Part shown: in pieces, positions 1-62,027 of the stretch
How positions within the stretch are numbered: the stretch's first letter is position 1
How the letters are laid out: each line of letters starts with the position of its first letter
NCBI GenBank assembly: GCA_028023455.1
Contig: JAQFVV010000007.1
Span: forward strand, 12,896,001-12,960,000
Source: Epiperipatus broadwayi
Taxonomy: Eukaryota > Animalia > Onychophora
Length of the DNA: 64,000 bases
Direction of reading: 5' to 3'
Position numbers and translations under genes: made by a program
The notes under the pieces: generated by a model
The model's database searches: none
The model's input: the letters and a program-made list of their open reading frames with translations, nothing else
Told to the model about the DNA's origin: nothing

Positions 1-606
1 GATCATCAACAACGATGATGTAATGTCCATTGGATTCTAAAGGTAATATAAAAGGAAAAGTTTGAAAATTATTAGGAGTTATTACGATGTGACTATATGT
101 GTTAGTGCGGACTTGAAGGAAAAGGGATTGAAAAGACGCAATCTTCAATCCCTTCAGTTTTGTTTAAAAAAAAAAAAGAAATGACATCGTTTTCTACATT
201 GAGGACCAGCCAAAGCAAAAGACCTTCGGATGAATAAATAAATCGGCCAGCAGAATACCAATCTCTTTAGGACGGCATGGGAATTCATGTTCAAATGGCA
301 AGCAATGGATAAAAGGAACATTTTGAAATCGTAAGAAATTTTTGAACTCTCAGCTTTAAATATATATAATTAATGAACATTTCTAAACAATAAGAACTTT
401 ACTTCTAAACTTGTTCCGTATTTAAAAAAAAAAATAGAAATATATTCCTATCTGACCAAACTAAATTATTTATTAATTAGGTATAATTTTATTTGATGTA
501 TTTCTTTTGTAAAATCATTTCCATTTCTTTTTTTTTTTTGTTCTTTTAAGTTTTTATTATGATTTCTGTTTTTCGATAAATTAAACTATATAAATATTAA
601 ACTTAA

Positions 607-1056
607 GTCGGGTGTGAATGGCTATATAGATTTGTAAAGTTATATTAGGGGAGGGTAATCTTAGGTTATTCATTCTGTAGTTGAATTAGGTCAATGGATT
701 GGATATATTGGTGTAATTAGTAGATGTAGTACGAGATTCGCTACAGGCAGAATCACTATTATATGCCGCACACACTCGTTTTGCCTATGGGAGGATTTAT
801 AAGATGGAGACTGCAGTTCTTTCCTATGTAGTTTTTTTTATTGCTCTCATCATCAGATAGATGTAATATTCCTATCTGATGAGAAGCAGTTTCTTCTCTT
901 AACTTAATTGTGCTGCTGTATTCGTATTACATTGAACACATCGATATATCAGATGGATTAAAGTTTGGTTTGACTGTGAACCTTTGGCCTAAGGTTAAAC
1001 AAGGATTGAATATTTTCTTTTCAAATGAAAATCTATGTAGTCTATTTATACTCGAC
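607..1056 (+). ncRNA. Hairpin module A (450 nt rod), copy 1
   Basis: Five stacked helices: 607-633/1029-1056, 656-668/985-997, 673-690/964-980, 702-714/938-950, 724-734/922-932. By hand count 81 pairs of which 19 are G:U. Nested apical hairpin tcagatag/ctatctga at about 852-879. Confidence 0.8.
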
Positions 1057-1084
1057 ACTCTAAATAAAGATGTATTAAATTTAA

Positions 1085-1383
1085 GTTGGGTATAGACGCT
1101 TGCATGGGTTCGTTACCAGTTGATTATGTTTTTGGTTTTCATATTTGATCAAAATATATAGACATTCGGTAAATACTGATACCTTACGGTGAGTATCTAA
1201 GATGTATTTATGTCAGATGTCTTTTAAGTTATTGGTGTCAATGCGGTGTCTTATAATGAACACCATTGGGTTTCTTGAATTCCCTATGCAATTGACAGTG
1301 TCAATGACTTTGTATTTTGATCATTTATGTTTATTTTGAAATGTTTTTGACCATGTAATCTATGTAACCGATCTATACTCAAC
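1085..1383 (+). ncRNA. Hairpin module B (about 300 nt), copy 1
   Basis: gttgggtatagacgcttgcatgggtt pairs with aatctatgtaaccgatctatactcaac using several G:U; tgatcaaaata pairs with tattttgatca; small apical stem gatac...gtatc. Confidence 0.7.
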
Positions 1384-1544
1384 ATTAAAAACACATTTTA
1401 TAAACCCATCTGTGCGAACTTATAAAAAATTAAAATGTAAACTTATAATATTATAAAAATTAAAATGTAAATTTAAATTCTAAAATCAAGTTAAAATCCA
1501 AAGTAAAAGTTATTCTAAAATAATGCTAAATTTTATATATGTGT

Positions 1545-1970
1545 GTAAATAAATGTTTGTGTGTTAATTATTGGCAGTGGCTTATTTTATTCTTTTTTAT
1601 ATATTCTGAGATAAGAATTTATTATAAATATAAATCTCTGCTACTCCCTGAGGTAGTGACAATGGGCTAATGACCGGATATCAAATTATATATAATAAAA
1701 AAACTTTTTAATTATGTATCTGCCTACTTTATAAATTTTCTAGGTTCAAATGCCTTGTGGCACCCTGTAGTGCAGATGATGTTAAGATAGACTTTTTCTG
1801 GATCGTTATAACTGACCACCCAACTTGGGCCGATCTATTAATAAAAACCACGTATATCCTGAGTAAATTTCTTTTTTCAGAATGAAATATGTTTATCTGT
1901 TTACATAAAGTCGGATACTTTAAATCTTATAAAAGCACTGCCAGAAAGAAATTGCACATATATTAAACAT
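1545..1970 (+). ncRNA. Hairpin module C, copy 1
   Basis: tggcagtggctt (about 1572-1583) pairs with aagcactgcca (about 1933-1943); taatgaccgga pairs with tctggatcgtta; atctgcctac pairs with gtagtgcagat; tip tgcc-ttgt-ggca. Outer and inner helices are also present in copy 3. Confidence 0.65.
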
Positions 1971-2069
1971 GAGAAAGTATTAATAATTTTAAATTGTATT
2001 TTGTTAAAAAGAAAGTCAAAAAGTTGCAATTAATATGTTTTTTTTGTTTGTTAATATATATTATGCTTT

Positions 2070-2232
2070 AACATGTATAGGTGCGCACAGCCACATAAGT
2101 TTATGATCGTAAATGTAGTACCTTACAATGAGTACTATTTGGGAATTTACTTCATAGTAACCCTATTTAAGCATTTCAATCAGTCATAAATAAGTTGGTG
2201 GTATTTATAATTGTGCTGCAAATATATATGTT
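2070..2232 (+). ncRNA. Hairpin module D (163 nt) between the tandem copies
   Basis: Helices 2070-2079/2223-2232, 2082-2090/2211-2220, 2091-2094/2198-2201, 2100-2107/2183-2190, with 3 G:U on the + strand. No homologue seen in copy 3. Confidence 0.5.
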
Positions 2233-2799
2233 TAAACCCATTATTTCTTAAAACATATTTACCTCAGTGCAACCTTCTTCAATAAATAATTTATAAAATT
2301 TGCTTGTCATGCCGTGTGTAAAAATAAAATGTATAAAAAAAAATAGAACGCTTGGGGGGAGGAAGCATAGACGTAAATGGTCCTTAGGAAAATGATAGTC
2401 AACATTTTTTTTTTGTATATAGTTTTTATACTAACCGAATGTTTTGTAAATTTTGTTAATCGTGTACTGTAATTACTAACCTTAAGTAATTTTTTTTTTT
2501 TGTTTATTTTTTTTAAAGCAAGTTTACTGATAGGTAATGGGCACAGACGACATTACATTGTGTTTTATTATTAAACATGAAAAAAATAAAAGTTCACAAA
2601 TAAAAATTTCTTTTTTTTTAAGAATTAAAAATTGAAAATTAAAAAATCATCTTAAACTCATATATATATAAAATCGCACAGATAAAAAAAAAAATTATTA
2701 AAATAAAACTTTATTAAAAATAGAAAAACTAAATCTTTCAACAAAAAGATTTAGAGATAAAAATATCTTTAAGTTTGGAAAACACATTAATTAATCAGA

Positions 2800-3461
2800 A
2801 ATGGAAATGATTATTTTAATTAGTCAAAGTGATCTAGCCTGTGGGCATTTAAATGTATAAGCATCGGTCAGATAGGAAAAGAATAGAAACTAATAGCAAA
2901 TGAGAGAAATCCATCGGGAAATCGGACCTCAATGGAAGGATCATCATCAACAATGACATAATGTCCATTGGATCCTAAAGGTAATATAAAAGGAAAAGTT
3001 TGGAAATTATTAGGAGTTATTACGATGTGACTATATGTGTTAGTGCGGAGTTGAAGGAGAAGGGATTGAAAAGACACACTCTTCAATCCCTTCAGTTTTG
3101 TTAAAAAAAAAAAAGAAATGACATCGTTTTCTACATTGAGGACCAGCCAAAGCAAAAGACCTCTGGATGAATAAATAAATCAGCCAACAGAATACCAATC
3201 TCTTTAGGACGGCATGGGAATTCATGTTCAAATGGCAAGCAATGGATAAAAGGAACATTTTGAAATCGTAAGAACTTTTTGAACTCTCAGCTTTAAATAT
3301 ATATAATTAATGAACATTTCTAAACAATAAGAACTTTACTTCTAAACTTGTTCCATATTTTAAAAAAAAATAGAAATAGATTCTTATCTGACCAAACTAA
3401 ATTATTTATTAATTAGGTATAATTTTATTTGATGTATTTCTTTTGTAAAATCATTTCCATT
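2800..3461 (+). ncRNA. Hairpin module U (about 660 nt, branched)
   Basis: aatggaaatgatt 2800-2812 pairs with aatcatttccatt 3449-3461; ggtcagatagga 2866-2877 with tcttatctgacc 3382-3393; cctcaatg 2927-2934 with cattgagg 3134-3141; apical gaagggattgaa 3059-3070 with ttcaatcccttc 3082-3093. Confidence 0.75.
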
Positions 3462-3541
3462 TATTTTTTTTTTTGTTCTTTTAAGTTTTTATTATGATTT
3501 CTGTTTTTCGATAAATTAAACTATATAAATATTAAACTTAA

Positions 3542-3995
3542 GTCGGGATGTGAATGGCTATATAGATTTGTAAAGTTATATTAGGGGAGGGTAATCTTAG
3601 GTTATTCGTTTCGTAGTTTGAATTTAGGTCAATGGATTGGATTTATTGGTGTAATTAGTAGATGTAGTATGAGATTCGCTATGGGCAGAATCGCTATTAT
3701 ATGCCGCACACACTCGTTTTGCCTATGGGAGGAATTATAAGATGGAGACCGCAGTTCCTTCCTATGGAGTTTTTTTTTATTGCTCTCATCATCAGATAGA
3801 TGTAATATTCCTATCTGACAAGAAGCAGTTTCTTCTCTTAACCTAATTGTGCTGCCGTATTCGTATTACATTGAACACATCGATATATCAGATGGATTGA
3901 AGTTTGGTTTGACTGCGAACCTTTGGCCTAAGGTTAAACAAGGATTGAATATTTTCTTTTCAAATGCAAATCTATGTAGTCTATTCATACTCGAC
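3542..3995 (+). ncRNA. Hairpin module A, copy 2
   Basis: Duplicate of 607-1056 with the same helices; at least one G:U in the basal stem of copy 1 is G-C here (ctattcatac). Confidence 0.8.
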
Positions 3996-4023
3996 ACTCT
4001 AAATAAAGATGCATTAAATTTAA

Positions 4024-4322
4024 GTTGGGTATAGACGCTTGCATGGGTTCGTTACCAGTTGATTATGTTTTTGGTTTTCATATTTGATCAAAATATATAG
4101 ACATTCAGTAAATACTGATACTTTACGATGAGTATCTAAGATGTATTTATGTCAGATGTCTTTTAAGTTATTGGTGTCAATGCGGTGTCTTATGATGAAC
4201 ACCATTGGGTTTCTTGTATTCCCTATGCAATTGACACTATCAATGACTTTGTATTTTGATCGTTTATGTTTATTTTGAAATGTTTTTGACCATGTAATCT
4301 ATGTAACCGATCTATACTCAAC
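4024..4322 (+). ncRNA. Hairpin module B, copy 2
   Basis: Duplicate of 1085-1383. Confidence 0.7.
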
Positions 4323-5368
4323 ATTAAAAACACATTTTATAAACCCATCTGTGCGAACTTATAAAAAATTAAAATGTAAACTTATAATATTATAAAAATT
4401 AAAATGTAAATTTAAATTCTAAAATCAAGTTAAAATCCAAAGTAAAAGTTATTCTAAAATAATGCTAAATTTTATATATGTGCGTAAATAAATGTTTGTG
4501 TGTTAATTACTGGCAGTGGCTTATTTTATTCTTTTTTTACATATTCTTAGATAAGAATTTATTATAAATATAAATCTCTTCTACTCCCTGAGCTAGTGAT
4601 AATGGGCTAACGACCGGATATTAAATTATTTTTTAAAAAAATTATTATTTTTAACTTACGTATCTGTCTACTTTATAAATTTTCTAGGTTCAAATGCCTA
4701 GTGGCACCCTGTAGTGCAGATGACATTAAGATAGACTTTCTCCGGATCATTACAATAGATTTTAAATTCTGTTTAATGCTGTAATTTTCATTTATTTTAT
4801 TTTTCTTAAGCGTCTTTTTTCTTAATGATAAAGTTTGATGTTGACACTAGATAGTATTAGTTTAAATGTTGTTGTTGTTGTTGTTGTTTTTTGCCCTTTG
4901 TAGACTCGGACATTATATCGTATCCAATGACCCTGTTCTAATTATGTGTGTAGTATGTCGAGGATGCATGGCTATATAGATTTAAGTTTTGAATTCCCTA
5001 CTTAGAAACAGGAACATTGATTTACAGGAAACTCATACCATCATCTGATTAGTTACTTTCTATGAATACCTTTAAATTAAAATAACTTTTTTTTTAATTT
5101 TTGTACATTTAGTGTCGTTTTCCTGTCTAATAAATTAAGATTTTATAATATTTTTTTACATTATTGTTCATTTATTTTAAGGCTAAGTAAAAATTTATTT
5201 TGTGTACAAATTTTTACTATCATTAAATTTCCAATACTGATGTGTAATATTATCCATTTTTCTGGATACTTATTGGAAGAGGGAGATAGGAGTCTCACAA
5301 CAAACTATTTAAAGGCTCTTTCAGCTTATACAAACAACGTTTTTTTTATTTTTTATTTGGTTTTACAG

Positions 5369-7279: not shown

Positions 7280-7639
7280 TCCATTCAGCTGTTCACTCCA
7301 TCTTATATAACCAATACACATGACCACAAACATGCATAAAGTGAAATTATCTCCAATATATGTGTTTCATGTTCAACTAGCACTCATCAATTGATCCAAA
7401 TCACCATTTCCACACATATATACAGCCAATACACATGACAACATGCATGCATAAATGAAATGATCTCCAATATACATATTTTCAGTTCATCTAGCACTCA
7501 TCAATTAGTCCAAATCACCATGTCCCACAGCAAGCTATTCACACGACCACATATATGCGTAAAATGAAATGATTTCCAATATACATATTTCATGTTCAAC
7601 TAGCACTCATCAATTGGTCCAAATCTCTATCTCCCCCCC

Positions 7640-7699
<60 letters not shown>

Positions 7700-25094: not shown

Positions 25095-25430
25095 AATAAT
25101 TAAATATTTTATTGTTGGGGACTTATGACAAGATGAAGCATAAAATAATGTATGATCCATGAACCATGAGTACCAAAGTCTCCTGTTAAACAACCACACT
25201 AAATTAGGTTTCAGATTTCAAGAATCTCCTAACAATGAAATGCACTATAGATAGTAAAAATAAATAATCAAATATTTTATTGCTGGTGACCTTATAAGAA
25301 GACAAAGCATAAAACAATTTATGATCCATGAACCATGAGTATCAAAGTCTGCTTTTCAACATTTCACCAAACTAGATTTCAGATTTCAAGAATCTTCTTC
25401 CATCGAAATGCACTACAGATAGCAAAAATA
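25095..25430. repeat. Diverged tandem duplication, 168-bp unit x2
   Basis: tatgatccatgaaccatgagta and ttcagatttcaagaatct recur with a 168-bp period. Confidence 0.9.
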
Positions 25431-31810: not shown

Positions 31811-33221
31811 ATTTCTATCGCATAAACTAAAGACTAAAATACATTTTGTAGATAGATTATTCAATGCAATAAGAACAATTGAGCCTTTAAGATGTGAAAT
31901 AAAATATGTTCTTTCTTTAGTGAAATTTTTTATGCAAATATGATGCAAGGTTTTCAGCTCTTATTAATCGATTATAGTATTTATGTACTTTGATGCAGTA
32001 AGTGGAAAATTATGGAGCTCAAAATCTATAATTTATAGCCTGGATCCATCATTTCTAGTGATGAAACATCCTATCTAATGAAGTGTCCTATTTTTTAACT
32101 TAGTAAGAGCTGCAATATTACATTAAAATCTAGATTGCATTTTAATGTAAATAAAATGAAAGTAATATGCTGAAAACATAAACTTTTAAACAACTGTGTT
32201 AATAAAAGATTTAATAAAACAAATTTCATATAAAAGTTATAGTAATTATTATATTATTGCAATAAAAACCTATTAAGAAATGTTTTTGTAGAACTGTGAC
32301 TAATTTAATAATACATTTTTCTGAAAAATCATATAGTGTAGCTCTCATAATAATTCAACACTTGTAAATTTTTTAGAGTATCTCTAAAAATATGTTCAAT
32401 GTTTTTTATTGCTTTTTAAAATTGTCTTGACATAAGTTTAGGCAATGTAAAATTAAACTATAAAGATAACAAGTATGACACATTGTTAAAAACCAACATC
32501 TTTGAGTTAAATCTTACTTATTTTTATGATTAGGCATAGATTAAAATATTGGATTTTAAAATGGGAGTTTTTCAATCTCTTCATATTTTCTAAGCTTGTC
32601 TATTTCTTATGTTATTATTTCAATAATCATATATTATTGTTTGTATCTTTTTTTCACTTTCCAGTTTCCTATATTTCTTTTTATGAAATAATGATTTCAT
32701 AAAAAATTATTTTATAAATTCTGCATGTAAAAAATGAAAAAGAATACATGTAATTTTTATAAAAAAATAATAATTTATTATTATCATTAGTGAACACATA
32801 GAAACTAATACAATCATTCTAACTTCCAAAGCAAAAGAAAATAATTAAAAAATTAGATATAGATTTTGCAATTATTATGCTAACCAATTTTCTAGTTGAA
32901 TGCTCTTCCTCATATATAAAATGTGGATTGTGATACTGTCTTTTTATTTCTGTAATGGACATTTTCTTTTGGAGGGCTTCAATATTTTTCTTAATTGTAA
33001 GTCTTTATTATATTTTCAATCATGTCCTAGCAATATAAAAAACCCTATGAGATCTTTTTTTTTTTTTTTGGAATGGCTTTTTTTATAAGATGAATGGCCA
33101 AGTCATCATAAAACCAGAAGTAGAACATAATAAATGGTCTGAATTTATTCAGTTTTATTTCCCATGTCTTTCTTATGTTATATTTAAATAAAGTCTATCT
33201 CTACATTTTTTTATATGTCTA

Positions 33222-33293
33222 AGCATTGACTGGGAAGTGAACCCAGACAAGCTGCTTGGAAGACAACTATGCTAACCACTAGGCAACCAATGC
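33222..33293 (-). pseudogene. tRNA-Gly(TCC)-derived pseudogene or SINE head
   Basis: Reverse complement GCATTGGTTGCCTAGTGGTTAGCATAGTTGTCTTCCAAGCAGCTTGTCTGGGTTCACTTCCCAGTCAATGCT: acceptor, anticodon (TCC) and T stems pair; T-loop/B-box is mutated (TTCACTT) and CpGs have decayed. Confidence 0.8.
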
Positions 33294-36200
33294 TTGACAT
33301 GACTATCTCCAAGTTAATACAGTAAAAGGAAAAATAACAGTTTTATTGAAAACTAATAAACTGAATAGTTGTATCATTATGATAAAGATCATACTATACT
33401 ATTTGATATCTGTTGATTACTTAAGTTTATAATAGAGGGCTCTAGAGTAAAGTGAAAATAACAATACTTGGGAGATCTGTCACTTTTGTAAAAAAAAAAA
33501 TAAAAAAAAATAAAACTATGTTTAAATCCATTAAAATTGGTTTTCATTCAAGAATAACTGATTTTTTCTAACATTCTGTTTTATGCAAATGGCTGCTATT
33601 GGAAAATGCAAAAGCCAAAATAAGTAATTCCAAAAAAGCTATGGTGTAACATAAGACTTTGAAAGAGATTTAAAATGAAACCAACTTATCAAAAAAATGA
33701 AAAAAGCTATTAGAAATCCTAATTTTCAGTAATAGAACAAGTTGAGAAATAATTTGGAAGTTAAACTCCATTGAAAATGTTAAAGAAATAAAAAAAAATC
33801 CTTTGCAAAGATAGTTTAAAGAATTTCACCATAACATCTGATAATTGTAAAGCAGAACAAGTTTCTAAAGCTGCAAACCAGCCAGGAAAGACAGGAAATA
33901 GCCCAGGGAACATAATAGACACAAAAAATATTCATAGAACAATGGGTAAAAGAAATTCTATCAGTAAATCTGTCATGAGAAAAAAGTTATGATTTTGTGG
34001 TGTCGAACTGGAAGTGGCCAAATGCAGCAAAATGGTGCAGGGGAAAAATAAGAAAAAAAATATTTTGAACATTAATTCGATCTAAATTGTAGAATCAAAC
34101 AATATAGAGTATGATTTAAGCTATCTCCCTGCACAAAAATTAAACTTTTCTGATGATCCAATCAAAGTTATTGGGCTGCTTTCAGTGAAATTGGGGTGCT
34201 ACAAAAAATAAAAAATTTCCAACTCAATACAGAATTACAATGAAGTGAATCCTGAGTCAAAAAACAACGATTGAAAGATACAAATAAGTATAAATGATGT
34301 TATAGATATAAACAGAGATACTGAAGTTCAAAATTAGTTAACATTGCTTAATTCAACAATTATTTAGAATACTATAAAGATTTATTGCAAACTATTGGAT
34401 TGCATAACTGAAGCATTGATTACTGGTCAACACATTGAATTCAGTCTAGACAAGCAGAATTGAAATAATATAAATAGGAAAGAGTCATTGTTGAAATCTT
34501 ACTACAATAGGCCTACTTTAGGGTTACAGAAACCAATTGTTAAAATATGATTTTGCCATCAACTTCTGTGTTCTACAAACAATAAGAAAGAATCTTACAA
34601 AGCTAGTCCCACTTTTCATAGTTGGAATGACCTAGTGGAATCTTACAATGCTAATCATACTCTTCATAATTGGAACAATTAAGTGAAATTTTATAGGCTT
34701 GATAGTAAATCATGGAGAACTTTGTTGTTGAATGAAATAAAAAATTATATTGAACTTTGATGGACATCTGCAGTTGATAAGGCTATCAAACAAACTTAGA
34801 ACTCCTCTGGCAAATGGAAAAATGGTATTTAATTGTTTGTGCAGATAAATCTAGCTGTGATTTTGAGATTACTATGAATCAATGTATTTTATATCATGTC
34901 CTTTTGTAAATCAAGGTATTTAATTTCACGAATGCATAAGTGATCACCCGTAAAAAATGGATTTGATTCCATGTGTTTTAATGTAATAGAAATTTTTTGG
35001 TCTAGGTGGGCAGGTTATAAGGTCCTGGCCTATTTGGATTGACATGTAAAAACTTTGACATTTGTTCATGCTGCTTTTGCCTAACAGTGCATTTTGGGGC
35101 AGGTGGACTGGGTTGGTCACTGCCCATGTGAACTGTTTAATGAGAAATCATAGGTTAATGATCATTTGATTTTTCAGTCTCAGGGTGGATGACATGGACA
35201 TGAGGGGGTTATTGGTCTGTGGGGGTGGATGGTGATCATTGCTATACCTAAGGATAGGATGGCCTGGCTTGGCTTTCGATGCCTTTTTTGGTTTGATTAA
35301 TGCTCTGAATTTGCAAAACCAATGTTACACTCGGAGAAAGCAAAACTCACTTATGGGGGAAGCCCAAAGTGGATATTCCTTACCCAAGGGATGGGTCTGG
35401 GACTCAAAAGGCATGGTTATGGCTGTTCAGTCATGGATGAATTCTGGGGGGGGGTCCTTCAGTTGGGTAAAAATCATCTCTCCTGTTTGGATTTTATTTT
35501 GAATGGACCATGGCATCTTCTTGATCGACTGCCATTGAATTGATGCTTGATTGTGATATTTACTTTTTGTAGGGATACCAGAAACTATTATTTTATTATG
35601 TAAGGCAGTTGGACTAATTTGAGCTACACCCTATTGCATAATTTTAATATATCTTTCTGATATTTTTGGCTCACAGGTGTAGGTGACAGAATGTTGTTCA
35701 GCCCACATGAGCTTATAGAATAGTTAATATGTGTTTTTCATCTATGGGTTGAGTACCCATAGAATTGTTTTGTAACCTTTGACCAATAAAGGTACTTTTT
35801 GGAACAACTATTTACATTTATTTGAAATTTTGCATTACTAAGGAGGAAATAAATTCATAAAATTAAACAATTGTGTAAAAAATGGAATAATGTAAAAAAG
35901 GACCACTTCATAAAATATATTTTTTTTATTGATATTTTAAAGATAAATGCATAATATAGAAATATATTTTTTGGTTTTATATTTCTTACAGAGTTTAGAA
36001 TAAACATTACATAAAGTGTCATGACTTTTAAACAAATCATTGTTTTTCATAAAGAGTAACTGAATTCTGATAACACATGTATTGTAACTCAACTGTAAAT
36101 CTTAAAACTGATTCTATTTTATTTTCTGGTTTTCTTTTTGAAAATAAACTTTTACATTAAGTCACATAGTTATTCAAAATTCTGAATAAATATATATTTA

Positions 36201-37246: not shown

Positions 37247-37906
37247 CTCTCTTAAGTCATCCATTCTATCTCATACAACTAATACATATGGCCACACATA
37301 TGTGGAAGATATAAATAATCTCAAATATACATATTTAGTTCTGAACCAGCACACATCAATTAGTCCATATCATCATCTCCCACACATATATTTAATCAGT
37401 GTTCAGTTTTGTATTAAGATAATAAATCTTCATACTTTAATGGATAGGCTTCAATCCATTACACACTCCAAATCCTCAGCCTTCCATACCATTGAAAGTC
37501 TGATGATGGATCACCACCAATTCTTTGTTAATGAAAGTATTATTGTCATGAATACTGCCCATCCCTCTTCTGTGCATCAGAGTAATTTAAGGTCAAAATG
37601 GGCATGCCAATAATATTGGCATTAAGAAGAGATTTAGGAATTCATCAATTGATTTTCAATGGTATTGATGACTGAGAAATTGGAGAGCATAGTGGATTGA
37701 AACTTGTCCATTAAAGTGTGAATTTTTGCTATCTTAATATAAAACCAAATCCTGATTATATATATATATGTATGGGAGATGATAATCTGAACAAAGTGAT
37801 GAGTCCTGGTTCAGCACAAAACATGTATATTGAAAATAATTTATCTTTTTCATGTGTCTGGTCATGTGTATTGGTTGTATGAAATAAAAAGAATGGCTGA
37901 AGAGAG
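37247..37906. repeat. Family P3 palindromic element (diverged arms of about 310-330 bp)
   Basis: Left ctctcttaagtcatccattctatctcatacaactaatac versus the reverse complement of right gtattggttgtatgaaataaaaagaatggctgaagagag; axis near 37575. Confidence 0.75.
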
Positions 37907-43897: not shown

Positions 43898-44210
43898 TTC
43901 ACTCGCAGGTGATGATGGTAGAATAAGTTATAGGCTGTTTTAACTTACATATTTAGTATTGGGTCTCACTCGCAGGCGATGATGATTTATAAAGATTCAT
44001 TTTGTTTAAATTTACAGATTTAAGATTTGATCTCACTCGCAGGTGATGATGATTTATTGAGTTACATTTTGTTTAAATTTACAGATTTAAGATTTGATCT
44101 CACTTGCAGGTGATGATGATTTATAAAGTTACATTTTGTTTAACTTACAAACATTATTTTCTCTCACTCTCAGGTGATGATGATTTATAATTTACCAAGT
44201 TACATTTTTA
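43898..44210. repeat. Minisatellite, 64-67 bp unit x5
   Basis: ctcactcgcaggtgatgatga core at 43898, 43965, 44032, 44099 and 44163. Confidence 0.92.
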
Positions 44211-52664: not shown

Positions 52665-53779
52665 ATTATCATTTTGCTTGATCTAATCTTCTATAAAACC
52701 TCATGATGAAGCATGTCAAGTTATAATGCCCAAATTGTAAATCTTTGCCATATAATAGATGTTTCCTATTAATTACTAGATGTTAGATATAACAAATTCG
52801 CAAAAATGAAATTAATCGTATTTCAAATATTCATAATAATAATGGAATTCTGAGTTAAGAAAACAACGATATAAATGGCAATACTTGGGAGATGTTATCA
52901 ATTTTTTATTGAAAATTATATCATATGATGTAATACTTATTTTAATTAAACTTAAATGGTAAGCTGTCACTTATTTAAGTATATTTTCATAATATCAAAT
53001 GTTTTTTTTTTTTAAAAAAAATTATATCTTCAGAATATTCTTTTTATTTTTCTAACTTTTAGAAAACTATCTTTGAATGTTTTATTTACGAAAAAATATA
53101 GATTAACATAATATATTATTAATATTATTAAAAATCAAATAAATGATGAAACTCTTGTTTATAAACATTACATTTTTAACCAAAACTATTTATGGAATAA
53201 TCGAGTCTGAAAACATTATTACAATAATCCACAAGCCACAAAGAATTACTAAGTTACATTTATATATAATGTCCACCTTATTTTATATCAATGCCAATCT
53301 GTTTATCAGATAAAAAAAGATCACTTCTATTTGAATAAGACATTGTCATTGATATGAAATAGGCGGGTATTATCGGCAAGTATATTTAAATAATTTGCTG
53401 TGGGATTGAACTTGAGACTTATTTAATAACATTTCCAAACTTGATTGATTCATGAATATATTATTATAAGTAAAAAAAAATATTGTGAGTTTGTTGAAAG
53501 TCATTACAATTTTTAATAAAGTATATATCAGTGATCAAAATACACCTGGGTCTCATATTATGCTGATTTTTTAAATGCGATTTTGAAGTTATGCGATTCT
53601 TGTTTCCTCTTAATATCTTTGTATGCATTTTTCTTTTATGTCATAAAAATTATTAGATCAGAAAACAACTCCAATAATGTGTTATTAATTTAAATATTAT
53701 ACATTTTGTGCACTCACACATCATATTTAAAATAATAGTGCATTATCAGAGTTTGACTTTCATCTAATAATTTCAATAT

Positions 53780-55870
53780 TTTCAGTGCTTTATAATAGTA
53801 CTGTCATAGATTTCATGCAATAAAGAAGTTCATAATTCACTTAAAATCAGGATTTCCCCATTTTATATTGTACCAATCGGAATGTAAGTGATGATTGAAT
53901 CTAACCGCAAAAACAATATCTGCACTACAAGAGCGCCATCTAGGCATTTGAGCCTAGAAAAATTTAGAGTAGGCAGATACGCGCTGTTAAGATTCCACTT
54001 TATTTAAATATTCTGATCATTAGCCCAAGTCACTAGCTCAGCGGAGACGCAGAGATAAAAATCTATAAATTTTATATCTTAAATATCAAAGAGTAAAAGC
54101 CACTGCCAGAAATTAACATATAAAAATATTTATTTACGCACATATAAAATAATATTTAAATTTTGAGGAATAAGTTTAACATTTTAGATTTTTATATTAA
54201 CTTTTAATTTTACATTTAACTAATTTCAATGAGTTTAATTATTATTTAGATAGTCAAGTATGAATAGACTACATAGATCTGCATTTGAAAAGAAAATATT
54301 CTTCCCTGATTTAACCTTAGGCAACAAATTTCGCAATCAACTGGTGCCAATCCATCTGATACATTCATGTATTCAATGTAGCATGATACGACAACACAAA
54401 ATACTATATTGTCAGGAATGTACATCTGAACAATAAGTAGAAATAGAGAAGAGATTGACTCTCCACCAACAGGAATGTGACATCTGTTGGCAAGTAGATC
54501 AATAAACAAAAAACTCCATAGGAATGGACTGCGGTCTTCTGCCAACTTACAAACCCATCCATAGGCAAACAGAGGGTGTGTGGCATATATCTATAATCCT
54601 GCCCGTAGCGGACCTCATACTACATCTACTAATTACACAAATATATCCAATCCATTGAACCAATTCAACTACAAAATGAATAACCTAAGATTACCCTCCC
54701 TTAATATAACTTTACAAACTATATAGCCATTCACGCCCGACTTAATTTTAATATTTAAATACGTTCGCACAGATTTGTTTAAAAATGTTGGGTATAGATC
54801 GATTACATAGATTCCACAGTCAAAAACATTTCAAAATAAACATAAACGATCAAAATACAAAATTATTGATACCGACAATCGCAGAGGGAAACTTATAAGT
54901 AACCCAATAGTATTCACCATAAGCTACTTGCGTTGTCACCAATAACTTAAAAGACATCCGAATAAATACATTTTAGATACTCACCGTAAGGTATCATTAT
55001 TTATCGAATGTTTATATATTTTGATCAAATATGAAAACCAAAATATAATTAACCGCAAACGAATCCATGCAAGCGTCTATAAACAACTTAAATTTCATAC
55101 ATTTAACCAATCTTTACAATAAGAAAAAAAAAATTTGAAATGATGTTTATCAATCGGAAAACATATAAAATTAAACATTATTAATTTGATTTAAAGACTT
55201 ACAAAAGTCAGATAAGAGTCCGTTTTAACATTTCAGTTGGCTTGTTTATCAATTTGTAAAACTTGACGAAAGTTCTTGATTGATTTTAACAATTGTTCAT
55301 TTCAGATAGCTTATGGTAGAAGAGTCCAGGTTTCTGCTTTTATTAATTCCCGCGATGCCTCTGTTGGAAGGGAATGTTCTGGAGATGGCAATAGCTGGTT
55401 CAAAGTATCACAGTCTTTTCATTTTTTTTTTTTAATAGAGAGTGTGGTATGTGCATCATACCTCATCTCTCAAACACAAACGCTGGAACTGTCCGAAAAA
55501 AACTGTATATCCCTTTTTATATTATCCACCAGGATTCAATGAACAAAACGTCACTAGTCTATCACTTTCGTTAGGGTCCGAGCCAAGGCTTAGTGCTTCC
55601 ATTGGTCAAACTAAAATTTCTTTCTTCTCTTATCTAACTTTTCATCTGACTTTTTAATTACACAGCTTTTAGATAATTAATAAACAATCATTTCCATTTA
55701 CAGATTACAGGAATTAATTAATACCTGTTTTTACTTTAACTTACGTTATTTTTTTATTAAAATATTTTTATATTTCAATCTGGTATTTTTTATTAAAAAA
55801 AATACGTTCAGATACTTTTTTTTTTTGTTTCTGAAAAAAATATTTTTAAAGTTTAGCATCTGTGCGAATG
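53780..55870 (-). ncRNA. Copy 3 (diverged paralogue, inverted) of the multi-hairpin locus, module order U-B-A-C
   Basis: Reverse complement aligns blockwise to copy 2: U 55698-55137, B 55087-54787, A 54741-54253, C about 54150-53780, plus upstream tcgcacagat near 55860. Stems are retained with G:U pairs on the - strand. Confidence 0.7.
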
Positions 55871-56033
55871 TATATACGTATAACAAACATTTTTAATTTT
55901 AGCGTTTAGTTTTTTACTCTTATTTGCGAACTTTTAAGTTTTTATTTTAAATTAATGTAACGACATATTTATGTATCGTTACAATATATACACATTAAAT
56001 TTTACAAGATTATAATGTAAATCTATTCAAATG

Positions 56034-56927
56034 TTATAGATGCCTATAGTATGCATGCTGTTGTTTTTGCATTTTAAAACACATTCTATTTTTGCTTTTT
56101 AAAAAAAGAGTACATATTCAATTAATTATTTAGTGTCTGTAATTTTATTTTTAAATAGTGAATAACAGTGGTGGGCACAATTAAATTTGCCTATTAAAAA
56201 TTAAAATCTGATTTTTAATTGTAATTAACAATTTAAAAATTACATAATGTGATGTGAAACAATGAAATTTCATTTTTAAACAAATTAAAAATTAAAAAAT
56301 TAAAGACAAAAATACAAATTTAATTTTTAATTGTTAGTTTTAATTAAATTTTACCCAACAGCAGTGAGTATGTGTCTTTTTATTATCATAAGTCTAAGTT
56401 CTTATTTTTATTTTAAACTTTTAGTTTACCCTAATGGAGAAGAAAAAACACCCAAGAAAAGGAATTTCTTTGGAAACAAAAATTTCAATTTTAGATTGCT
56501 TAGTGACAGGGGAATGATCAACAGCAATTGGAAAACATTTTAGTTTGGGTGAGTCCACTATAAGAGCAATTAAAAAAATAAAGTTGGTGCTAGTTGTATT
56601 TCCTCTTGTGATGAATCTGATGTCTTACTAGTTCACAAACAAACCTGCATATATTTAAATAGCAATAATGATTAAAATACTGTACATGTATGAAAAAATG
56701 TAAAATACTGTAAATTACACATAAAAATATACTGTTTTGAATAAAATTATATCCTATAGTTAATGAAAAAAGTTTGTCTTGTATCAATTTTTTTTCAAAT
56801 TTGAAATTTTTTATTAGTCATATTTTATTTTCTTATTTTTTTTTAATGCGAATTTTAAAGTAATTTTACTTTGTTTTTCTGCTTTTCTGAGGAACCTATC
56901 TACTGCATAAAATGAGACCCAAGTGTA
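56034..56927 (+). mobile_element. Tigger/pogo internal-deletion derivative (5' boundary uncertain)
   Basis: 56434-56583 encodes MEKKKHPRKGISLETKISILDCLVTGE*STAIGKHFSLGESTIRAIKKIK, a CENP-B-type N-terminal HTH; 3' end ctactgcataaaatgagacccaagtg-TA resembles a CpG-decayed Tigger TIR. Confidence 0.75.
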
Positions 56928-58947: not shown

Positions 58948-61221
58948 AAACTCACGAACAATTGCCACTGACCATGAAACATGAAAAGCATCTTATAAAA
59001 CAGGTACCCATACCCAAGGCATAAATTCTATCCATAATCTATAGTTCAATCTATATAAATCGTTCATTTGTAAATTTAATTGTAAATCTATTATGCAGTT
59101 TCTTTTAATAATCTAGCTTACCTAATTCTGTCTATCTCTTGGGTACATATTTCTACTTTTACATTTTATTATTTAACAATGTCATACTGATAATATTTCT
59201 GACTGGGCCTCACCAAATTTTAAATATCAATTATAATTACAATGGTTACCATATTCTGCGACAACCAAATCTTAAAATTCTTTTATATACTTCTGTTGGT
59301 GGGTCAGCTTGGGAATCACCATAATTCCTTAATAAATAAATACATTATTACATGAAATAGTGGATGTGTGTCCAGTAAATCCTATGATTAACATTTACTT
59401 ATATTAGATTATTTTGTTTCAATTATTTTCATGTTAATCGACACGCATTCATTGCTTCACTCATTGTAATGCAAGAGTCTACTACGTGGCTAGTGGTGGA
59501 CATATTAGTTCTTAGAGTAACCACCCTAATTTATAATTACCTTTAAACTTGTTTTTTTTTTATTTTAAATAATAAACTCATTATTCATTAAACCCTTTAA
59601 TTGCATTTCTTTGAGAGCAAAATACGGTCTTTATTAAATGTTGGTAATGTGAGACCGAGTCATAAATTTTATATTCAATCCGAACCTATTATGTTAGTTA
59701 TACATGTGTTACAGTTTAGAGATGTGATAATCCATCTTTGAGCCTTGGATACTCTGGATCATACAGTATTTACTGAATCCTAGTCGTCCTACACAAGGTG
59801 ACATAATGAATGTTCTTGTAGGGCTTGACGCCCGTCACACAGTCAGGTAGTAATTGTGGCATGAACCATTTGCACCTGATGATGCTTATGTGACCCTCTT
59901 ACCTTTGGGCCTATGGCAAATGCCAACCCATTGTTTCAAATTCATCCATTGGCTCAGCAGTTTCAATGTACTGCCATGCTCACATCACTTTTCTAAACAT
60001 GCCACGTGTTTCTCTATTATTAATTTTATTATCCCAAGTATGACTCCATCTCCACATTATTTGACATAAACTCACTTTCAAATCAATGTTTGCCCATAAT
60101 TTAACGCCTCATAAATACTTTATTTGATTAAATAAAATATATGTCCACAGCTGCTATTATCATTTTTAATTTAGACTCATTAATTGCAAAGCTATTAAAT
60201 CCCTGAAGACATGAATTTGGAATACTTGCTCAAGAATTCAGGTAGCTAGATTATGTCAGTCAAATAATTATACTCTTTGTAAATATAAAACAGTATTGGA
60301 AAAATAATACCACTACTGGAATTTTAATATAATTATGTTTTCTTTAAATAATTTTAATCTTAAATGTTATAATTAAATAATTTCAAACCATACGTTTGCC
60401 ATCATATATTTATTTATTCGACACACCCATTCCATATACTATCTTCTCGATTATTTAAAATATAAATGTCTAATATTAATATTATATATAGCTAACTCGA
60501 AAATAAAGTCTATTGGGTCTTTCACATCTCCCTGATCCCCATGCCTAAAGAAATGTTTACTAATGTGGCATCAGATGTGTTGTTTCATAGAGTGTATTGT
60601 GGAACCAATAAACCATGTTCAAACTCAGTACTACTGGAAGCTTCATTACCTATGTGCTGCTTTTCAGTGTGGTGGTCGAATTCAGCACTATGTTAATGAA
60701 GCATACTAATCTGACCATTACAATATATATAATGGTATTAAACAAATGGAGCAAATCACTATTCCCCAGGATATTAGTTAAACATACCCTAAATGTTGGT
60801 CAAAGGATCAACAACATAATGAATCCACCTATTCTTGGATATCTGATGTTTAATTGGCATATCTATGCTAACATTGCTGGTATTTCAGAGTGACAGTCTT
60901 CATCATTTGTTCAGCATTTATGGTGCTTTTAATTCATACTTTATGGGAATTTAATTCCTTTGTTTACATATATACTGAGCCATGTTTAATTTAAAGTTTA
61001 TATAATAATATAGTGTTTCATTAAATTGATAAACTAATTTCAGGATTTTTAAGTAATAAATTAGCAGGAATATCATATAATTAAAAAAGGAGCATTGGAA
61101 TATTGTGAAGCCTAAAATCTAATGCATCAACATCAATGACTTTGAAAACGTCATTGGATGCCCATTTATTTGATTATCTTTTATTTGATATTTCTGAGCT
61201 AAAACTGTATTTTGGAAAGAT

Positions 61222-61364
<143 letters not shown>

Positions 61365-61401
61365 CAGCATTTATTTTTATAGCGTCTGTATACAATTGTA
61401 A

Positions 61402-61947
61402 TTACATTGATATCGGCCTTTCAAGTCAAATTGTGCAAACGCTTTTATGAGTGTTAAATAATAAATGAATACCCTCTGACCAAACAAGATATAGAATTTA
61501 TGCAGGAATAAAAGGAATCCTCTTATTCCTATGACTCAAATATTTATATATGAGCAAATCTGAAGTACTGGCACAGAAGGTGTGACTATAGAACAGTCAC
61601 TTTAAATTACTATATATAACGTATGAATGAATGACGCTGATGAAATTTACTAGAATTTACTGAACGTCATTCCAACTGAAACTTAATCATATATATAAAT
61701 CAGCATTTATTTTTATAGTGTTGGAATGACGTTCAGTAAATTCTAGTAAATTTCATCGGCATCATTCATTCATACGTTATATATAGTAATTTAAAGTGAC
61801 TGTTCTATAGTCACATCTTCTGTGCCAGTACTTCAGATTTGCTCATATATAAATATTTGAGTATCTTGTTTGGTCAGAGGGTATTCATTTATTATTTAAC
61901 ACTCGCAAAAGCGTTTGCACAATTTGGTTTGAAAGGCCAATATGAAT

Positions 61948-61951
<4 letters not shown>
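61402..61951. repeat. Recent long inverted repeat (about 232-bp arms, about 96% identical, 43-bp spacer)
   Basis: 61402-61676 versus 61720-61951: about 9 substitutions by hand count plus a 43-nt insert in the left arm. Confidence 0.95.

Positions 61952-62027
<76 letters not shown>

What the first reader, a model, noticed from the sequence alone, without database searches (positions are those of the whole stretch)
53780..55870. Diverged inverted paralogue keeps the stems through compensatory substitutions
Seen: this copy has diverged in sequence but keeps the pairings on the - strand. In A, left ttAGG / right TTTgg (copy 1) becomes ttGGT / ACCag (A-U to G-C, G:U to G-C, G:U to U-A). At the base of U, gaaatgattatttta/taaaatcatttc becomes gaaatgattgttta/taaacatcatttc. 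In C, atctgcctac/gtagtgcagat and cagtggcttt/aaagcactg are retained. Inference: the structure, not a reading frame, is conserved, which is the strongest support for a functional RNA.
Basis: partly seen in the sequence, partly recalled or inferred. Interest (0 to 1): 0.82.

Follow-up and report, generated by a model that had tools for sequence, protein, structure and literature searches.

The report
Repeat copy with sense-strand RNA hairpins
The "diverged paralogue" is one more copy of a very abundant non-coding mobile repeat. Its two long hairpins fold only as sense-strand RNA and kept that fold as the sequence drifted, so the conserved structure belongs to a genomic parasite and not to a host RNA gene.

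Summary
Window ~53869-55983 (sense = minus strand) is a 17-40% diverged, inverted copy (c3) of the unit at 1-4755 (c1, c2).

Two modules are long imperfect hairpins that fold well only on the sense strand: A (54252-54745) and B (54779-55092).
- RNA z-scores are -6.6 and -5.6 on the sense strand, against -0.3 and -2.6 on the antisense strand.
- Arm-against-arm DNA alignment gives 14-21 G:U-type mismatches per hairpin, against 0-4 of the opposite type.
- Between c1 and c3, 30 one-sided changes keep a sense pair (4 would keep an antisense pair). Twelve pairs changed on both sides, against about 3 expected.

The U and C "stems" carry no such evidence.

The interpretation as an RNA-gene paralogue fails.
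- A DNA run lays 44,503 contigs on these 3 kb, with summed word depth about 10^6 against about 200 in the unique flank.
- More than 12 contigs join 53864 directly to 55984. The 2115-bp unit has TG...CA ends and an ATAT repeat on each side, and it sits inside another repeat.
- Two c3-private bases break pairs that the family majority keeps.

Best reading: a high-copy, probably retro-type (LTR-like) element whose sense RNA carries selected hairpins.

The scan reached the same reading before, on c1/c2 (s1-085366) and on another piece of this genome (s1-085551).

The parts
53869..55983 (-). c3, a 2115-bp non-coding repeat unit. On the sense (minus) strand it starts TGTAACG... and ends ...GGTACA.
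   Evidence: Contigs that join 53864 to 55984 (12 in DNA run X1, 3 in X8) skip exactly this stretch plus one ATAT. It is homologous to c1/c2. There are no long TIRs and no internal direct repeats.
53865..53868 (.). ATAT direct repeat on the low-coordinate side. It is either a target-site duplication or microhomology at a deletion.
   Evidence: The joint table gives 'both = 4'; sequence read.
55984..55987 (.). ATAT direct repeat on the high-coordinate side.
55956..55983 (-). 28-nt terminal palindrome at the sense 5' end. c1/c2 have a palindrome of different sequence at the same place (about 2536-2560).
   Evidence: Read from the sequence. Homology between c1 and c3 starts here and is absent upstream.
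55110..55700 (-). 'U' region, weakly similar to c1 2800-3465 (60-65%). It shows no strand-specific fold.
54779..55092 (-). Module B, a long imperfect hairpin (about 105 pairs, 15 G:U) that folds on the sense strand.
54252..54745 (-). Module A, a long imperfect hairpin (about 140 pairs, 31 G:U) that folds on the sense strand. Its apex hairpin is duplicated relative to c1.
53912..54245 (-). Module C, conserved at 71% with c1 and without a significant fold. It has the highest representation in the putative RNA runs (53906-54006).
53720..53864 (-). 3' flank that is still homologous (about 60-65%) to the 3' flank of c1 (1851 to about 2000). It is part of the interrupted repeat.
   Evidence: Anchored alignment score 7.5 against -13.6 +/- 5.8 for 2000 random window segments, none as high.
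53502..53864 (.). Low-coordinate half of the other high-copy repeat that c3 interrupts. Unique DNA begins below 53502.
   Evidence: Summed depth rises from 154-268 to about 10^6 at 53502, and joints link this half to 55984 onward.
55988..56300 (.). High-coordinate half of the interrupted repeat. It runs on beyond the stretch that was laid.
1..1850 (+). c1, a copy of the same unit cut by the window start. Module order is U-A-B-C: A 605-1058, B 1080-1395, C 1445-1783.
2535..4755 (+). c2, a tandem duplicate of c1 (period 2938, 90-100% identical), truncated about 45-90 nt before the 3' end.

Best explanation
c3 is not a gene paralogue. It is one copy of a very high-copy, non-coding interspersed repeat, about 2.1 kb long, lying inside another repeat. 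c1/c2 and c3 represent two diverged subfamilies, with module order A-B in one and B-A in the other.

The element carries two related hairpin modules, A and B, with about 105-140 pairs each. They fold only on one strand because 15-30 of the pairs in each are G:U. As the subfamilies diverged, substitutions in the stems were filtered so that sense-strand pairing survived: G:C or A:U changing to G:U, and some double changes. After insertion, individual copies decay neutrally.

Inferred mechanism: the element is copied through, or depends on, a sense-strand RNA, most likely as a retro-type element. The TG...CA ends and the 4-nt flanking repeat resemble a solo LTR or a non-autonomous integrase-dependent unit. 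The hairpins would be cis-acting parts of that RNA, serving stability, packaging or recognition by the copying machinery. Their many wobbles and bulges possibly also keep them from being perfect dsRNA.

Shown here: high copy number, the boundary, the strand-specific fold and the pair-preserving substitution bias. Inferred: the RNA intermediate, the retro/LTR class and the role of the hairpins.
For: Copy number and boundary:
- 44,503 contigs of DNA run X1 lie on 53300-56300. By likeness they split 7,264 / 14,357 / 16,780 / 6,102 (99%+, 95-99%, 90-95%, under 90%).
- Summed word depth is 0.4-3.4 million, against 154-268 in 53300-53501.
- The joint 53864 to 55984 (skips 2119, 4 shared letters) appears in 12 X1 contigs and 3 X8 contigs.
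- A contig joint 55106 to 54253 shows that the c1-type order exists elsewhere in the genome.
- Organism C holds pieces 91-99% identical to c3, one of which runs colinearly across the B/A junction.

Representation in RNA-labelled runs: the small runs X7 and X8 hold 2,000-2,400 contigs. Their depth relative to X1 varies 20- to 1000-fold between neighbouring bins, which is unlike uniform DNA.

Strand-specific fold:
- RNA folding of both strands.
- Arm-against-arm mismatch asymmetry of 14-21 against 0-4.
- The G>C and T>A skew is confined to the modules. G/C is 1.5 and T/A 1.45-1.55 in A and B, against 1.10 and 0.88 in the rest of the element. This argues against a general mutational strand bias.
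- With DNA energy parameters the fold loses significance (z -1.6 sense, -0.9 antisense).

Pair-preserving change:
- Permutation tests.
- 30 one-sided changes keep a sense pair against 4 for the antisense strand, and 12 pairs changed on both sides against 0-2 in slid controls.

Neutral decay of this copy: at 54924 and 55012 c3 has private bases that break pairs, while 99-100% of the family depth has the pairing base.

No coding capacity or known RNA family.
Against: - The class is unsettled. No paired LTRs, primer-binding site or polypurine tract were found. The 690-nt spacer between c1 and c2 has neither at the expected places (read by eye).
- The 3' flanks of c1 and c3 remain homologous for about 150 nt beyond the 53869 boundary. 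So the 3' end may lie further out. Alternatively the 'empty-site' contigs could be an internal-deletion derivative with ATAT microhomology, and not an uninterrupted host repeat.
- Transcription is not proven. The runs are only guessed to be RNA, contigs carry no strand, and the tool states 'not shown transcribed'.
- Covariation rests on two independent lineages. One direction of the projection test is not significant for A (p 0.38).
- Summed word depth is not a copy number.
Confidence: 0.72

Rival explanations
1. Host structured non-coding RNA or hairpin-RNA (endo-siRNA) gene family. The three copies would be paralogous genes, and their stems would be kept because the host needs the RNA or its small-RNA products.
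For: - Sense-specific, G:U-rich long hairpins with pair-preserving changes.
- Family sequences are abundant in runs labelled RNA.
Against: - Tens of thousands of contigs match, many near-identical.
- The boundary is insertion-like and lies inside another repeat.
- Copies with both module orders occur elsewhere, and in other species.
- c3-private changes break pairs.
- U and C carry no structural signal.
- No target gene or small-RNA data are available.
Confidence: 0.07
2. Purely DNA-level palindromes (foldback or MITE-like modules nested in a repeat) with no RNA role. Arm similarity would be kept by arm-to-arm conversion or recent origin. The G:T excess would come from a strand-biased mutation or editing process, for example A-to-I or C-to-U changes fixed through copying.
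For: - A and B share about 30 nt at both ends and change order between copies, as independent cassettes would.
- Run X7 shows an excess of T>C places on the plus strand, which is A>G on the sense strand: 53 places against 23-32 for the other transitions.
Against: - The modules have no flanking target duplications of their own.
- The composition skew is confined to the stems and is absent from the rest of the element.
- G:U pairs differ from the other copy both by A/G and by C/U changes, about 11 against 12 in A. A single editing activity does not explain that.
- Stems and loops diverge at similar rates (0.185 against 0.199 in A), yet pairing is kept.
Confidence: 0.13
3. The strand-specific hairpins act in a single-stranded DNA intermediate, as in a rolling-circle or ssDNA-type transposon, and not in RNA.
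For: - G:T is the most tolerated DNA mismatch.
- There is a terminal 28-nt palindrome.
- 3'-flank homology between copies could be read-through capture.
Against: - The ends are not Helitron-like: no TC...CTRR, and a 4-nt flanking repeat is present.
- With DNA energy parameters module A is not significantly structured (z -1.6).
- No Rep/helicase remnant or any ORF is present.
Confidence: 0.06

Closest known systems
Solo LTRs and non-autonomous LTR-type retroelements (LARD/TRIM-like), with cis-acting RNA structures in the LTR or leader
   Same: - Non-coding and high-copy.
- TG...CA termini with a short imperfect terminal inversion (7 of 9 nt).
- 4-nt flanking direct repeat.
- An uninterrupted form of the flanks exists elsewhere.
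- Structure that matters only on the transcript strand.
   Different: - No second LTR, primer-binding site, polypurine tract or gag-pol partner was seen here.
- 3'-flank homology between copies is unexpected for independent solo LTRs.
- Hairpins of 105-140 pairs with 15-30 G:U are much longer than typical LTR or leader stem-loops (own knowledge).
Drosophila-type hairpin RNA (hpRNA) endo-siRNA loci
   Same: Long inverted-repeat transcripts with G:U pairs on the transcribed strand, sometimes in tandem cassettes (own knowledge).
   Different: hpRNA loci are few-copy host genes derived from their targets. This sequence is a very high-copy dispersed repeat with no identified target and decaying individual copies.
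Foldback elements and MITEs
   Same: High copy, non-coding, palindromic modules that fold into long hairpins, with cassettes rearranged between copies.
   Different: The modules lack their own target duplications. The pairing is strongly strand-asymmetric, which DNA-level inverted repeats do not require.
Ginger (Gypsy-integrase-related) DNA transposons (PMC2836005)
   Same: 4-bp target duplication, a TGTNR-type terminus at one end, and an AT-rich target as reported for Ginger2.
   Different: Ginger elements have 40-270-bp TIRs. Here only 7 of the first 9 nt are inverted and no longer TIR is detectable.
Retrozymes and hammerhead-bearing repeats, noted elsewhere in this genome by the scan
   Same: Abundant non-coding repeat of a few hundred nt per module, with highly structured sense RNA.
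   Different: No hammerhead or other ribozyme motif was found in c1-c3, even at permissive thresholds.

Membership tests
Host hpRNA / structured ncRNA gene | Single- or few-copy host locus | tested here: not met
   44,503 DNA contigs at 80% likeness or more lie on 3 kb. Summed depth is about 10^6, against about 200 in the unique flank.
Host hpRNA / structured ncRNA gene | Locus-level purifying selection on the stems | tested here: inconclusive
   Two c3-private bases (54924, 55012) break pairs that the family majority keeps. Only 40 of 313 variant places were visible.
Host hpRNA / structured ncRNA gene | Small RNAs processed from the stems | not testable with these tools
   No small-RNA library was available, and contigs carry no strand or size information.
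LTR (solo) of an LTR retrotransposon | 5'-TG...CA-3' termini with a short terminal inversion | tested here: met
   The sense strand starts TGTAACGAT and ends ATTGGTACA, with 7 of 9 nt inverted.
LTR (solo) of an LTR retrotransposon | 4-6-bp target-site duplication with an uninterrupted site elsewhere | tested here: met
   ATAT lies at 53865-53868 and at 55984-55987. The joint 53864 to 55984 appears in more than 12 contigs. A deletion with microhomology gives the same picture.
LTR (solo) of an LTR retrotransposon | Full elements with two LTRs, a primer-binding site, a polypurine tract and a gag-pol or non-coding interior | tested here: inconclusive
   None is in this window. The c1-spacer-c2 arrangement has no TGG-type site after c1 and no purine tract before c2. 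The genome could not be searched.
LTR (solo) of an LTR retrotransposon | Independent copies share no flank | tested here: not met
   The 3' flanks of c1 and c3 are homologous for about 150 nt. The 5' flanks are unrelated (p 0.35).
Ginger / TIR DNA transposon | Terminal inverted repeats of tens of bp | tested here: not met
   Local alignment of the first 250 nt against the reverse complement of the last 250 nt scores 14, against 12.1 +/- 1.8 for shuffles. The criterion comes from PMC2836005.
MITE / foldback (modules A and B as separate elements) | Each module flanked by its own target duplication | tested here: not met
   The flanks of A and B in c1 and c3 show no matching short repeats.
Retrozyme / hammerhead repeat | Self-cleaving ribozyme motif in each unit | tested here: not met
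   There is no Rfam ribozyme match in 1-5200 or 53000-56500 at E up to 5, and none at gathering score in the window.
Helitron | 5' TC, 3' CTRR with a subterminal hairpin, insertion between A and T without duplication | tested here: not met
   The ends read TG...CA on both strands and a 4-nt repeat flanks the unit.

The most novel reading that the evidence does not exclude
A dominant repeat family of this animal genome propagates through a sense RNA. Its two very long, G:U-rich hairpin cassettes would be under selection in the active lineage and would be shuffled as modules. Such cassettes could be a previously undescribed class of cis-acting retroelement RNA structure, for example a packaging or stability element shaped to avoid Dicer or ADAR-type recognition, or a source of small RNAs that the host has begun to use.
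Probability: 0.25. Interest if true: 0.6.

Novelty: new member of a known kind. Interest (0 to 1): 0.38.

Why it matters
- The result removes a tempting false positive. Covariation-like signals between 'paralogues' can come from subfamilies of a transposable element, and not from a host RNA gene.
- It also documents a clear case in which selection on a single-stranded, sense-polarity fold is visible inside a very abundant repeat. That gives a handle on how the family is copied (RNA intermediate) and on which strand is the functional one.
- If the hairpins prove to be required for propagation, or to be processed into small RNAs, they would be a useful model of RNA structure evolving in a genomic parasite.

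Tried and rejected
- Known RNA families: Rfam at gathering score on the whole window, and at E up to 5 on both loci, gave only chance-level hits.
- Coding reading: no ORF exceeds 99 aa in the copies. The 114-aa open stretch of module A found no relatives. Ten window ORFs are absent from the protein collection, so no further genomic loci could be fetched that way.
- Fetching other family copies by exact conserved 23- and 25-mers found nothing: two scans of metagenome contigs and one of viral contigs.
- Profile searches (nhmmer) of the window with A, B, C, U and both flanks found no copies beyond c1-c3.
- c1-spacer-c2 as LTR-interior-LTR was rejected for lack of a primer-binding site and a polypurine tract.
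- Ginger-type TIR transposon was rejected on TIR length.
- Helitron was rejected on its ends.
- General mutational strand bias was rejected because the skew is confined to the modules.
- An A-to-I-only origin of the G:U pairs was rejected because A/G and C/U differences are about equal.
- One folding script with my own shuffler timed out and was replaced by the fold tool.

Full report
**What is there.** The window is AT-rich (23-33% GC) and gene-poor. No ORF exceeds 123 aa and there is one tRNA-Gly.

- A 2938-nt unit is repeated 1.6 times in tandem at 1-4755 (c1, c2; 90-100% identical).
- The finding's stretch holds an inverted, much more diverged copy (c3). Module B (55102-54745) matches c1 at 83%, module A (54761-54217) at 74-75% and module C (54245-53912) at 71%. 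The 5' part matches at 60-65%.
- The order of A and B is swapped: U-A-B-C in c1/c2 and U-B-A-C in c3.
- A and B share about 30 nt at each end. They are related cassettes, so unequal recombination between them is a simple route to the swap.

**The structural observation.** A and B are long imperfect hairpins, and the fold is strikingly specific to one strand.

| Module, copy | Sense strand | Antisense strand |
|---|---|---|
| A, c1 | -141 kcal/mol, z -4.3 | -76.5, z -0.2 |
| A, c3 | -164, z -6.6 | -88, z -0.3 |
| B, c1 | -98, z -4.7 | -74, z -3.8 |
| B, c3 | -95, z -5.6 | -56.5, z -2.6 |

- To avoid the bias of predicting on one strand, I aligned each left arm to the reverse complement of its right arm as DNA and counted transition mismatches. 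G:U-type on the sense strand against G:U-type on the antisense strand gave 21:4, 21:2 and 21:1 for A, and 15:2, 15:0 and 14:2 for B.
- The G>C and T>A skew is confined to the modules. G/C is about 1.5 and T/A 1.45-1.55 there, against 1.10 and 0.88 in the rest of the element. A general strand-biased mutation process is therefore unlikely.
- With DNA energy parameters module A is no longer significant (z -1.6 and -0.9), so the fold is of the RNA kind.

**Compensatory change.** On the RNAalifold consensus, A has 140 pairs and B has 106.

- 8 pairs in A and 4 in B changed on both sides and are kept. Partners slid by 1-3 columns give 0-2.
- One-sided changes that keep the pair number 21 + 9 on the sense strand, against 3 + 1 on the antisense strand.
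- I took the structure from c1 alone and permuted c3's letters among columns with the same c1 base. c3 keeps more pairs than expected: A 133 against 121.7 +/- 3.4 (p 0.0004), with 7 double changes against 2.2 (p 0.005); B 101 against 93.9 (p 0.002).
- The reverse projection is weaker (A p 0.38, B p 0.012).
- Stems and loops diverge at similar rates.
- The U base stem is an unchanged 8-bp core plus one A:U to G:C change, and U shows no consistent fold signal or strand bias.
- The C stems are merely conserved sequence, and C is not significantly folded.
- The claim therefore holds for A and B, at moderate power, because the window holds only two independent lineages.

**What it is.** Laying Logan contigs on 53300-56300 changes the picture.

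- DNA run X1 places 44,503 contigs at 80% likeness or more, 7,264 of them at 99% or more.
- Summed word depth is 0.4-3.4 million from 53502 onward, against 154-268 in 53300-53501.
- More than 12 X1 contigs and 3 X8 contigs join 53864 directly to 55984, with 4 shared letters.
- So 53869-55983 (2115 bp) is a discrete unit with ATAT on each side. It sits inside another high-copy repeat whose uninterrupted form exists elsewhere.
- On the sense strand the unit starts TGTAACGAT and ends ATTGGTACA: TG...CA, with 7 of 9 nt inverted. It has no longer TIR, no internal direct repeats and no ORF.
- A contig joint 55106 to 54253 shows that the c1-type order also occurs elsewhere.
- A run of another species (X9) holds pieces 97-99% identical, and one piece at about 91% that runs colinearly across c3's B/A junction.
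- At 54924 and 55012 c3 carries private bases that break pairs, while 99-100% of the family depth has the pairing base. This locus is decaying while the family keeps the fold.

**Transcription.**

- Two small runs labelled 'RNA?' (X7, X8; 97-98 million letters) hold 25-36% of the sampled words of both c1 and c3.
- They lay 2,000-2,400 contigs. Their depth relative to X1 varies 20- to 1000-fold between neighbouring bins. It is high on C, A, B and part of U, and near zero on the AT-rich 5' part and the flanks.
- That is unlike uniform DNA sampling. The tool itself says transcription is not shown, and contigs have no strand.

**Class of element: what remains open.** TG...CA ends, a 4-nt flanking repeat, no TIR, no coding capacity and a sense-RNA-specific structure fit a solo LTR or another integrase-dependent non-autonomous retro-type unit. 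Three points stand against a clean call.

- No second LTR, primer-binding site or polypurine tract was found. The spacer between c1 and c2 lacks them.
- The 5' boundary is firm, because homology between c1 and c3 starts exactly at the joint and the upstream flanks are unrelated (p 0.35).
- The 3' flanks of c1 and c3 stay homologous for about 150 nt past 53869. The anchored score is 7.5 against -13.6 +/- 5.8, with 0 of 2000 random segments as high, and identity is 60-65% down to about 53720.

Three explanations of the 3'-flank homology remain: the two copies descend from one composite; the element carries flanking sequence along; or the 'empty-site' contigs are a deletion derivative with ATAT microhomology.

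Ginger-type transposons share the 4-bp duplication and TGTNR end but need 40-270-bp TIRs (PMC2836005), which this unit lacks. Helitron, MITE and retrozyme criteria are also not met.

**Verdict.**

- The inference 'structure, not a reading frame, is conserved' holds.
- 'Functional RNA gene with paralogues' does not hold. This is a copy of a very abundant mobile repeat whose sense RNA carries selected hairpins.
- The scan reached the same reading before, for c1/c2 in this window (s1-085366) and for another piece of the genome (s1-085551).
- New here: the boundary of c3 with its uninterrupted-site contigs; the unbiased strand test; the restriction of the skew to the stems; the copy-private pair-breaking changes; and the unresolved 3'-flank homology.

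Noticed in passing
window 1408-1418 (+), 4347-4357 (+), 54764-54774 (-); reverse complement at 2673-2683 and 55858-55868: In every copy the 11-mer ATCTGTGCGAA follows module B on the sense strand. Its reverse complement lies in the AT-rich 5' part. There are 5 matches against 0.5 expected by chance. This could be a conserved long-range pairing or a protein-binding motif in both orientations. All pairs are Watson-Crick, so it carries no strand information.
   Followed up: partly
window 53300-56300, run X7: In X7 (labelled RNA?) the places with T>C on the plus strand, which is A>G on the sense strand, number 53. The other transitions number 23-32, and DNA run X1 has 34. This hints at A-to-I editing of sense hairpin transcripts. 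X7 is from a differently labelled organism than the DNA run, so strain differences are not excluded.
   Followed up: no
window 53647-53773: An inverted repeat with 54-nt arms (76% complementary, 19-nt loop) lies inside the other high-copy repeat that c3 interrupts.
   Followed up: no
window 61395-61958: Nested inverted repeats: 143-nt arms at 98% complementarity (61534-61676 and 61720-61862), inside 97-nt arms at 92% (61395-61491 and 61862-61958). They lie next to a long (AAT/ATT)n run at about 61180-61330.
   Followed up: no
Rfam at gathering score finds no hammerhead anywhere in the window.
   Followed up: partly
window 33221-33294 (-): A lone tRNA-Gly (TCC) gene, found by ARAGORN and by Rfam at 33.1 bits, in otherwise gene-poor sequence.
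   Followed up: no
window 7309-7647, 37308-37381; 43899-44146; 25122-25430: Short tandem arrays with periods of about 110, 67 and 169 nt, plus many (TA)n microsatellites (7.6, 21.2, 24.1, 39.2, 40.8, 47.5 kb).
   Followed up: no
window 54400-54440 against c1 alignment columns 314-350: The apex of hairpin A in c3 carries a 37-nt insertion. It duplicates the neighbouring small hairpin (CAGATGT-ACATTCCTG type) and adds an extra local stem relative to c1/c2.
   Followed up: partly
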